This document shows positions 58,124 to 59,997 of a stretch of 64,000 bases of DNA, piece after piece. Under the pieces are notes generated by a model. The model made no database searches, was not told the DNA's origin, and worked only from the letters and a program-made list of their open reading frames with translations. This DNA is from Glycera tridactyla (lineage: Eukaryota). Positions within the stretch are counted from its first letter, which is position 1; each line of letters begins with the position of its first letter. Position numbers and translations under genes: made by a program. The DNA lies in contig OZ286476.1 in the NCBI GenBank assembly GCA_965644265.1, positions 78,554,001 to 78,618,000 on the forward strand. Reading direction: 5' to 3'.

Positions 58124-58302
58124 CTCGCATGCAGCGGTGAGGAATCCAGCAGTGATGGGAGCAGCCAGGATGAGTGGAAGAGCAAAACCGGTGAACTGGA
58201 GATGTATCTGACAGGCCTTGCTGCTAGCCAGGTAGGTGAGTAGACTACACGAGGCCTGTAGGGCCCAGGCTGAGGTCCACTCTACCTCCATATCACTGAG
58301 AT
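58124..58302 (-). CDS. CHS: Chitin synthase exon D
   Basis: taacag|ATCTC ... GAG|GTCAGC, 179 nt, phase 1/0; LTYLASSKACQIHLQFTGFALP. Confidence 0.85.
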
Positions 58303-59997
58303 CTGTTACATGAACTGAAAGACAAGACACAACAGGTTGAACATGATATCGCCTCCAGATATGCATACATGTCAGTAGACTACACGAGGCCTGTAGGGCC
58401 CAGGCTGAGGTCCACTCTACCTCCATATCACTGAGATCTGTTACATGAACTGAAAGACAAGACACAACAGGTTGAACATGATATCTCCTCCAGATATGCA
58501 TACATGTCAGTAGACTACACGAGGCCTGTAGGGCCCAGGCTGAGGTCAACTCTACCTCCATATCACTGAGATCTGTAACATGAACTGAAAGACAAGACAC
58601 AACAGGTTGAACTTGATATCTCCTCCAGATATGCATACATGTCAGTAGACTACACGAGGCCTGTAGGGCCCAGGCTGAGGTCCACTCTACCTCCATATCA
58701 CTGAGATCTGTAACATGAACTGAAAGACAAGACACAACAGGTTGAACTTGATATCTCCTCCAGATATGCATACATGTCAGTAGACTACACGAGGCTTGTA
58801 GGGCCCAGGCTGAGGTCCACTCTACCTCCATATCACTGAGATCTGTTACATGAACTGAAAGACAAGACACAACAGGTTGAACATGATATCGCCTCCAGAT
58901 ATGCATACATGTCAGTAGACTACACGAGGCCTGTAGGGCCCAGGCTGAGATCCACTCTACCTCCATATCACTGAGATCTGTAACATGAACTGAAAGACAA
59001 GACACAACAGGTTGAACATGATATCGCCTCCAGATATGCATACATGTCAGTAGACTACACGAGGCCTGTAGGGCCCAGGCTGAGGTCCACTCTACCTCCA
59101 TATCACTGAGATCTGTTACATGAACTGAAAGACAAGACACAACAGGTTGAACATGATATCTCCTCCAGATATGCATACATGTCAGTAGACTACACGAGGC
59201 CTGTAGGGCCCAGGCTGAGGTCCACTCTACCTCCATATCACTGAGATCTGTTACATGAACTGAAAGACAAGACACAACAGGTTGAACTTGATATCGCCTC
59301 CAGATATGCATACATGTCAGTGGACTACACGAGGCCTGTAGGGCCCAGGCTGAGGTCCACTCTACCTCCATATCACTGAGATCTGTTACATGAACTGAAA
59401 GACAAGACACAACAGGTTGAACATGATATCTCCTCCAGATATGCATACATGTCAGTAGACTACACGAGGCCTGTAGGGCCCAGGCTGAGGTCCACTCTAC
59501 CTCCATATCACTGAGATCTGTAACATGAACTGAAAGACAAGACACAACAGGTTGAACATGATATCTCCTCCAGATATGCATACATGTCAGTAGACTACAC
59601 GAGGCCTGTAGGGCCCAGGCTGAGGTCCACTCTACCTCAATATCACTGAGATCTGTAACATGAACTGAAAGACAAGGCACATTAGGTTGAACATGATATC
59701 TCCTCCAGATATGCATACATGTCAATAGACTACACGAGGCCTGTAGGGCCCAGGCTGAGGTCCACTCTACCTCCATATCACTGAGATCTGTAACATGAAC
59801 TGAAAGACAAGACACAACAGGTTGAACATGATATCTCCTCCAGATATGCATACATGTCAGTAGACCACACGAGGCCTGTAGGGCCCAGGCTGAGGTCCAC
59901 TCTACCTCCATATCACTGAGATCTGTTACATGAACTGAAAGACAAGGCACAACAGGTTGAACATGATATCGCCTCCAGATATGCATACATGTCAGTG
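58240..59997 (-). repeat. Exon D acceptor array (135-bp units, 13 acceptors)
   Basis: Acceptors from 58302 to 59922 = 12 x 135; unit is about 71 nt of intron plus 64 nt of exon. Confidence 0.94.

What the first reader, a model, noticed from the sequence alone, without database searches (positions are those of the whole stretch)
58124..59997. Twelve extra exon D acceptors are all in frame and stop-free: a possible length-tunable exon
Seen: the unit is exactly 135 bp (45 codons) and the ORF 58049-60043 is open in the exon D frame across the whole array, with all 13 taacag|ATC acceptors apparently intact and units nearly identical. Inference: splicing to the k-th upstream acceptor adds k x 45 aa (DLSDMEVEWTSAWALQASCSLLTCMHIWRRYHVQPVVSCLSVHVT) without triggering NMD, so copy number and acceptor choice could generate protein isoforms.
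Basis: partly seen in the sequence, partly recalled or inferred. Interest (0 to 1): 0.7.

Follow-up and report, generated by a model that had tools for sequence, protein, structure and literature searches.

The report
Splice-acceptor minisatellite before chitin-synthase exon
A 135-base piece covering the end of an intron and the start of a chitin-synthase exon is copied 13 times in a row; this is a known repeat type (a "mirage" minisatellite), its open reading frame is no more than chance would give, and nothing shows that the 12 spare splice sites make protein variants.

Summary
The 135-bp unit (13.0 copies, 97% alike, 58239-59996) is the last 71 nt of an intron plus the first 64 nt of a minus-strand chitin-synthase exon (58302-58124). 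All 13 copies keep AG|ATC (7 taacag, 6 ttacag), and all 12 spare acceptors are in frame and stop-free.

The "length-tunable exon" reading is not supported.
- A unit that is a multiple of 3 with an open intron part has odds of about 0.1.
- The 13 variants among units split 9 non-synonymous, 4 synonymous, 0 stop, as expected without selection.
- No protein among 1.84 billion representatives matches the intron-derived 24 residues.
- The same gene has four more clear acceptor arrays (periods 94, 77, about 105, about 138). Of their 46 AG-keeping decoys, 43 give a frameshift or stop, yet the exons stay intact.

This is a "mirage" minisatellite, described in amphioxus, where RT-PCR showed normal splicing, with donor-side analogues in human F7, IFI6 and CBS. 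The scan has already noted at least 13 such arrays elsewhere in this genome.

My best reading is a tolerated by-product of extreme minisatellite instability, with the acceptor next to the complete exon being the one used.

The parts
58239..59996 (-). 135-bp minisatellite of 13.0 copies. Each unit is the last 71 nt of intron C-D (polypyrimidine tract, tctttcag, then t[a/t]acag) plus the first 64 nt of exon D.
   Evidence: TRF; unit-by-unit comparison; found nowhere else in the 2.04-Gb genome except the inverted copy
58124..58302 (-). Authentic exon D of a chitin-synthase gene (179 nt, phase 1). Only its first 64 nt are part of the repeat. Its non-repeated 3' part holds the hydrophobic helix. 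The donor is GAG|gtcagc.
   Evidence: Paralogous exon of the same length and phase, 44% identity; homologues P0001, P0002, P0004-P0006 align to it; hydropathy
58437..59922 (-). Twelve decoy acceptors. First exon-like bases lie at 58437, 58572, 58707, 58842, 58977, 59112, 59247, 59382, 59517, 59652, 59787 and 59922. All have AG and all are in frame and stop-free.
60594..60951 (-). Upstream exon C (tttcag|ATC ... ACAG|gtaggt), whose donor must pair with one of the 13 acceptors.
   Evidence: ORF; sequence; homology to the paralog
57650..57846 (-). Downstream exon E (cctag|GTGTGG ... AACAA|gtgagt).
   Evidence: ORF; 48% identity to the paralog; homologues continue CE-VWN across the D/E junction
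60242..60446 (+). Inverted copy of 1.5 units (intron part, exon part, intron part, ending exactly at the AG). It is 195-202 of 205 identical to each of 12 registers of the array. In the pre-mRNA it is antisense to the units.
   Evidence: 99% identity; duplex -390 kcal/mol against -78 for shuffles; identity per register
59997..60136 (.). 36-bp tandem repeat (4 copies) between the array and the inverted copy. Its motifs resemble pieces of the 135-bp unit.
   Evidence: TRF; sequence

Best explanation
This is a young 'mirage' minisatellite. A 135-bp segment spanning the 3' splice site of chitin-synthase exon D was duplicated in tandem. It then expanded by slippage or unequal exchange, in a genome where minisatellites fill over half of this window. 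The complete exon survives only at the downstream end of the array, so the extra copies lie inside the intron. I infer that the spliceosome mainly uses the acceptor next to the complete exon. That is the only one followed within 179 nt by the real donor (exon definition), so the 12 decoys are removed with the intron. The open, in-frame state is an accident of unit length (1 in 3) and of a stop-poor intron end, and is not yet eroded because the array is young and homogenised. Shown: anatomy, exon identity, chance level, lack of coding constraint, sister arrays. Inferred: the origin mechanism and which acceptor is used.
For: The unit is unique to this locus. The exon boundary is fixed by a paralog of equal length and phase and by homologues. 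The gene is a chitin synthase: PF03142 hits at window 43066-43416 and 49526-49645, with EDR and QRRRW motifs intact. 58.6% of the window lies in tandem arrays. The open frame is within chance. The 13 variants split 9 non-synonymous, 4 synonymous, 0 stop, against 294:90:21 possible changes; P(no stop) is 0.50; and 7 variants lie in the exon-derived part against 6 in the intron-derived part. Four other arrays in the same gene carry 6, 12, 19 and 9 AG-keeping decoy acceptors, and 43 of these 46 give a frameshift or stop, yet all mapped exons are open and conserved against the paralog. The older catalytic-exon array shows the likely fate: lost AGs, R-to-C changes in the EDR motif, frameshifts and stops in the decoys only. 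Literature: mirages in amphioxus Adh3, TnC, globin and PGBD5 do not disturb splicing (PMC3087553 section 16; PMC3902484). In human F7, LMNB2 and PDGF only the authentic site is used (PMC1557585).
Against: The decoys are identical to the real acceptor across the branch region, the pyrimidine tract, the AG and 64 nt of exon, so nothing in the sequence itself silences them. First-transcribed or donor-proximal acceptors can win in other systems (my own recollection, not checked here). In human IFI6 and CBS the two pseudo-sites nearest the real one are used (PMC1557585), so leakage to k=1 or 2 is plausible. Junction-spanning arrays are about 3-fold commoner in this gene than random placement predicts, which pure accident does not explain.
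Confidence: 0.8

Rival explanations
1. Leaky decoy use without function. The real acceptor dominates, but the nearest one or two decoys (58437, 58572) are used at a low level. This adds 45 or 90 residues just before the helix-forming part of exon D. The products escape NMD and are simply tolerated.
For: The decoys are sequence-identical to the real site, in frame and stop-free. Exons of 314 or 449 nt are still within reach of exon definition (general knowledge). Human IFI6 and CBS use the two pseudo-sites nearest the authentic one (PMC1557585).
Against: No RNA data. The amphioxus mirages and three other human cases show only the normal splice (PMC3087553, PMC3902484, PMC1557585).
Confidence: 0.25
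2. One reading: a length-tunable exon. Copy number and regulated acceptor choice produce chitin-synthase isoforms with k x 45-residue inserts that have a function.
For: All 12 decoys are in frame and open, the only array of five in this gene where that is so. The inserted peptide is not predicted to add a transmembrane helix (hydropathy at most 1.08), so membrane topology need not flip.
Against: The open frame is within chance. The variant spectrum is neutral, including 5 non-synonymous changes in the exon-derived part. No homologue has an insert at this point, and no protein in the library contains the unit's intron-derived part. The unit is young and locus-specific. Sister arrays are frame-breaking.
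Confidence: 0.04
3. Docking/selector control. The inverted 205-nt copy near exon C pairs with one register of the array at a time. It masks two adjacent acceptors, loops out the units in between, and so picks the acceptor.
For: The inverted copy lies about 150 nt downstream of the exon C donor. It is 195-202 of 205 identical to 12 registers, with a duplex of -390 kcal/mol.
Against: It can cover at most 2 of 13 acceptors. A near-perfect 205-bp duplex looks like a recent inverted duplication and a likely editing or RNAi substrate (inference), not an evolved 20-30-nt docking site. None of the other arrays in the gene was seen with such a partner, though this was not searched systematically.
Confidence: 0.03
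4. The gene is dead or the array is an assembly artefact, so the splice question is moot.
For: About 60 decoy splice sites in one gene is a heavy load, and there are at least 9 chitin-synthase loci in the genome, so redundancy is possible.
Against: All 18 homology-mapped exons are open, 36-89% identical to the paralog, and the catalytic motifs are intact. The units carry distinct private variants in exact 135-nt register, which is unlike a collapsed or inflated assembly.
Confidence: 0.03

Closest known systems
'Mirage' minisatellites of amphioxus (Adh3, troponin C, globins BflGb6 and BflGb9, PGBD5)
   Same: They are tandem arrays whose unit spans an intron/exon boundary and reiterates the splice signal. 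BflGb6 is the same subtype: intron 3' end plus exon 5' part, units of 150-160 bp, 3-6 copies, 81-100% identity, with edge units less homogenised (PMC3087553 section 16). Here too the edge units are the most divergent.
   Different: The organism is probably not a cephalochordate: the genome is 2.04 Gb, and other agents of the scan call it an annelid or marine worm, which I did not check. There are more copies (13), and all decoys are in frame and open. A nearby inverted copy is present. Splicing was checked by RT-PCR in amphioxus but not here.
Human F7 intron 7 37-bp VNTR (also LMNB2 and PDGF)
   Same: The minisatellite's first unit spans an exon/intron junction, giving several identical pseudo splice sites that stay silent. 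The site adjoining the complete exon is the one used (PMC1557585).
   Different: Those are on the donor side, not the acceptor side. The 5'-to-3' scanning model proposed for F7 would, if applied to acceptors, favour the wrong (upstream) copy, so a different rule (exon definition) has to be invoked here.
Human IFI6 (6-16) and CBS junction minisatellites
   Different: They are donor-side with short units (IFI6 12 nt by my recollection; CBS 31 bp per the title of reference 11 in PMC1557585), and their use is documented by cDNA. Here the units are 135 bp and no cDNA was available.
Intron gain by tandem duplication across AG/GT proto-splice sites (Rogers model, as discussed in PMC3087553)
   Same: Duplication of a splice-junction segment leaves the extra copy removable as intron.
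   Different: No new intron is created here. The existing intron is lengthened by 1.6 kb.

Membership tests
Mirage minisatellite (junction-spanning tandem repeat) | Head-to-tail array with a minisatellite-sized unit | tested here: met
   135 bp x 13.0 copies, 97% matches, no indels
Mirage minisatellite (junction-spanning tandem repeat) | The unit contains an intron/exon boundary with its splice signal, and the exon part is genuine coding sequence | tested here: met
   71 nt of intron plus 64 nt of exon, with AG in all 13 units. The exon is verified by the paralog and by homologues.
Mirage minisatellite (junction-spanning tandem repeat) | The complete exon sits at one end of the array, and the other copies are truncated exon pieces | tested here: met
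   Only the k=0 copy continues into the remaining 115 nt of exon D. The other copies switch to intron sequence after nt 64.
Mirage minisatellite (junction-spanning tandem repeat) | Regular splicing is not disturbed and the decoy sites are unused | not testable with these tools
The only indirect support is 43 frame-breaking decoys in the same, apparently intact gene.
Mirage minisatellite (junction-spanning tandem repeat) | Copy-number instability between haplotypes or individuals | not tested
   Only one assembly was available.
Coding VNTR (repeat translated as part of the protein) | The repeat lies within the mature mRNA, and the repeat peptide is present in the protein or its homologues | tested here: inconclusive
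   No hit to the intron-derived 24 residues among 1.84 billion representatives, and homologues have no insert. The species' own transcripts were not available.
Coding VNTR (repeat translated as part of the protein) | Purifying selection on the repeat peptide or on its reading frame | tested here: not met
   9 non-synonymous, 4 synonymous, 0 stop, against a neutral 73:22:5%; P(no stop) = 0.50
Chitin synthase (host gene) | GT2 catalytic domain with EDR and QRRRW motifs | tested here: met
   PF03142 above its cut-off at two exons. GEDRW and QRRRW are read in the exon 43409-43177.

The most novel reading that the evidence does not exclude
The decoy acceptors are really used. Array copy number, perhaps together with alternative pairing of the inverted 205-nt copy, would then set how many 45-residue modules are inserted ahead of a transmembrane helix of this chitin synthase. 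That would be an NMD-proof, heritable and fast-mutating length dial for a membrane enzyme.
Probability: 0.05. Interest if true: 0.7.

Novelty: new member of a known kind. Interest (0 to 1): 0.25.

Why it matters
The locus itself is an ordinary example of a little-studied repeat type. Its value is as a natural experiment. Thirteen identical 3' splice sites, each with identical branch region, pyrimidine tract and 64 nt of exon, compete for one donor, and here any mis-choice would be visible as protein rather than erased by NMD. One gene carries about 60 decoy acceptors and tens of decoy donors. Together with the many similar arrays the scan has noted in this genome, this offers a ready-made test of how acceptors are chosen (exon definition versus proximity or first-come-first-served). 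It also raises the question of why junction-spanning minisatellites are commoner than random placement predicts.

Tried and rejected
- **Pfam on single-exon peptides A, C, D and E.** Only noise, E of 0.035 or worse. An earlier attempt failed on a wrong frame.
- **Dispersed satellite or mobile element.** Rejected, because the unit occurs only at this locus plus the local inverted copy.
- **The upstream tctttcag as the true acceptor.** Not excluded, since it is also in frame (+4 residues). The paralog's equal exon length and the homologue spacing favour AG|ATC.
- **Each unit adding a transmembrane helix and flipping topology.** Rejected, because hydropathy of the unit peaks at 1.08 against 1.87 for the real helix.
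- **Inherited mirage shared with the paralog at the exon starting at 35634.** Rejected, because the paralog's units have different boundaries (79/103 bp, almost all exon), so they arose independently.
- **Taxon.** The protein atlas gave only GT2/chitin-synthase clusters and no useful taxon.
- **Original mirage paper.** PMC117041 is not held. One paper search failed on a syntax rule, and one look-up found nothing.
- **P0003.** This hit from the big search is a spurious match of a cysteine-rich repeat protein.
- **Joined exon model.** A joined exon C+D+E model was deliberately not built or searched. Exons were searched apart, by reference.
- **The search for homologous proteins.** Not used. The exhaustive search already showed no close relative of this exon in the collection.

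Full report
**What is there**

TRF finds a 135-bp period with 13.0 copies, 97% matches and no indels at 58239-59996. On the minus strand each unit reads as follows:
- 64 nt identical to the start of an exon, beginning ATCTCAGTG.
- 71 nt of intron end after that, running pyrimidine tract, tctttcag, ttcatgt[a/t]acag.

AG|ATC recurs at 58302+135k for k=0..12 with exact spacing. Only the k=0 copy continues into the remaining 115 nt of the exon. The minus-strand ORF 58049-60043 is the only one of six frames without stops. All 12 upstream acceptors are in frame and stop-free down to the real exon. A second in-frame AG lies 12 nt upstream in every unit.

**The gene**

The window is G000:C47:78554001-78618000 of a 2.04-Gb animal genome.

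Identity:
- Pfam Chitin_synth_2 matches minus-strand exons at window 43066-43416 and 49526-49645.
- The exon 43409-43177 reads GEDRW...QRRRW.

Exon D boundaries:
- A paralog at C42:74549243-74549419 has an exon of the same 179 nt and the same phase, 44% identical.
- Translating the paralog's ORFs against the window maps 18 open, conserved exons from 60957 down to 24642.
- An exhaustive search of 1.84 billion representative proteins with one unit plus exon D (105 aa) gave six hits.
- Five of them are homologues that align to exon D from about DLSD onward and continue into exon E. The sixth is spurious.
- None matches the intron-derived 24 residues.

I searched the exons apart, by reference, and did not build a joined model.

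**Is the open frame more than chance?**

No.
- 58.6% of the window lies in tandem arrays.
- 8 of 24 long arrays have a period divisible by 3, and 4 of those 8 have an open frame.
- The exon-derived part is open by definition.
- A 72-nt piece is open in a fixed frame in 36% of random segments, 51% of acceptor-like sites and 23% of shuffles of the real piece.
- Joint odds are therefore about 0.08-0.17 per junction-spanning array.
- The scan has noted more than a dozen such arrays in this genome, and this gene alone has five.

Openness of 13 units is also not 13 independent events. The units differ by only 13 distinct variants:
- They split 9 non-synonymous, 4 synonymous and 0 stop, against 294:90:21 possible changes.
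- The chance of seeing no stop is 0.50.
- Seven variants lie in the exon-derived part and six in the intron-derived part.

There is no sign of coding constraint.

**Context inside the same gene**

Four more arrays overlap the 5' ends of exons and reiterate their acceptors:

| Exon start | Acceptor copies | Period | Note |
|---|---|---|---|
| 35634 | 13 | 94 bp | |
| 29185 | 20 | 77 bp | |
| 24760 | 10 | 103-105 bp | |
| 43409 (catalytic exon) | 9 | 134-151 bp | two copies have lost AG |

- Of their 46 AG-keeping decoys, 43 give a frameshift and/or a stop.
- The older catalytic-exon array shows decay in the decoys only: R-to-C in the EDR motif, frameshifts and stops. The real exon is intact.
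- A donor-side array (57 bp x 36, 32168-34215) reiterates the last roughly 22 nt of an exon plus GTGAGT.
- Further junction-linked repeats lie at 37987-38748, 50440-50484 and 52831-53920.
- The paralog has its own arrays, on both acceptor and donor sides, with different boundaries.
- A rough Poisson estimate gives about a 3-fold excess of junction-spanning arrays over random placement (P about 0.003-0.02). This excess is modest and unexplained.

**What it is**

- Globin BflGb6 is the same subtype, with an intron 3' end plus an exon 5' part.
- RT-PCR in amphioxus indicates regular splicing (PMC3087553 section 16; PMC3902484).
- Human donor-side analogues exist. In F7, LMNB2 and PDGF only the authentic site is used. 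In IFI6 and CBS the two nearest pseudo-sites are also used (PMC1557585).

I found the term through my own paper search. Earlier notes of this scan reach the same filing for other loci of this genome, and some report RNA showing only the normal splice. I did not check those notes.

**How it most likely works**

- Origin: tandem duplication across the 3' splice site, then expansion and homogenisation. The edge units are the most divergent. This step is inferred.
- Splicing: the acceptor next to the complete exon is the only one followed by the real donor within 179 nt. Decoys would make exons of 314 to 1799 nt. Exon definition therefore favours 58302, with some leakage to the nearest decoys possible. 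This step is also inferred.
- The inverted 205-nt copy at 60242-60446 can pair with any of 12 registers (-390 kcal/mol). It covers at most two acceptors at a time, so it cannot silence the array.

**What could not be done**

The N runs in the window were left alone. One of them (50494-50730) hides any further copies of the exon start at 50329.

**Verdict**

The locus is a new member of a known kind, with low to moderate interest.

Noticed in passing
window 35588-36795, 29146-30679, 24702-25729 (minus strand): Three further acceptor-spanning arrays in the same chitin-synthase gene: 13 copies of 94 bp, 20 copies of 77 bp and 10 copies of 103-105 bp. AG is kept in every copy. Nearly all decoys break the frame or run into a stop.
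   Followed up: yes
window 43334-44503 (minus strand): An older, degenerate array holds 9 copies of the acceptor plus the first ~80 nt of the catalytic exon (GEDRW...). Spacing is 73-151 nt because of a (CAAT)n microsatellite inside the unit. Two copies have lost AG, and several decoys read GEDCW or carry stops. The real exon is intact.
   Followed up: yes
window 32168-34215 (minus strand): A donor-side array of 57 bp x 36. Each unit repeats the last ~22 nt of the exon ending near 34277, plus GTGAGT and a short intron piece.
   Followed up: partly
window 37987-38748, 50440-50484 and 52831-53920 (minus strand): The 42-bp x 18 array joins an acceptor-like ttacag to an internal piece of the next exon. 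The start of the exon at 50329 is duplicated upstream across a (TGA)n run, next to an N run. The 88-bp array begins exactly at the donor of the exon ending at 53920.
   Followed up: partly
L010 1740-1840; paralog C42:74536000-74585999 at local 18691-19201, 21938-22495, 24830-26063, 27382-27796: The paralogous chitin-synthase gene also has junction-spanning arrays, on both the acceptor and donor sides. Some sit at the same exons as in the window gene but with different unit boundaries, so they are independent events.
   Followed up: partly
window 9577-10455 (plus strand): A 45-bp x 13 array in which each unit carries gtgttgcag|GT plus the start of a plus-strand exon that continues at about 10455. 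It is in frame and open in two frames. This is the subject of another note (s1-320847).
   Followed up: partly
whole window: 58.6% of the 64 kb lies in TRF arrays (28% in the paralog's 50 kb). Junction-spanning arrays are about 3-fold commoner in this gene than random placement predicts (P about 0.003-0.02), which is unexplained.
   Followed up: partly
window 60137-60242: The unique spacer between the 36-bp repeat and the inverted copy holds a short imperfect palindrome (ggactggcgtggta / taccacggcagtcc). The unit boundary itself lies in palindromic ACATGT/ATGCAT motifs, which may be a template-switch signature.
   Followed up: no
window 42383-42416: An interstitial (CCCTAA)5.7 telomere-like run lies inside an intron.
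   Followed up: no
genome G000: There are at least nine loci with Chitin_synth_2 matches, on C47 (3), C42 (2), C40 (2), C28 and C11. This is a large chitin-synthase family.
   Followed up: no
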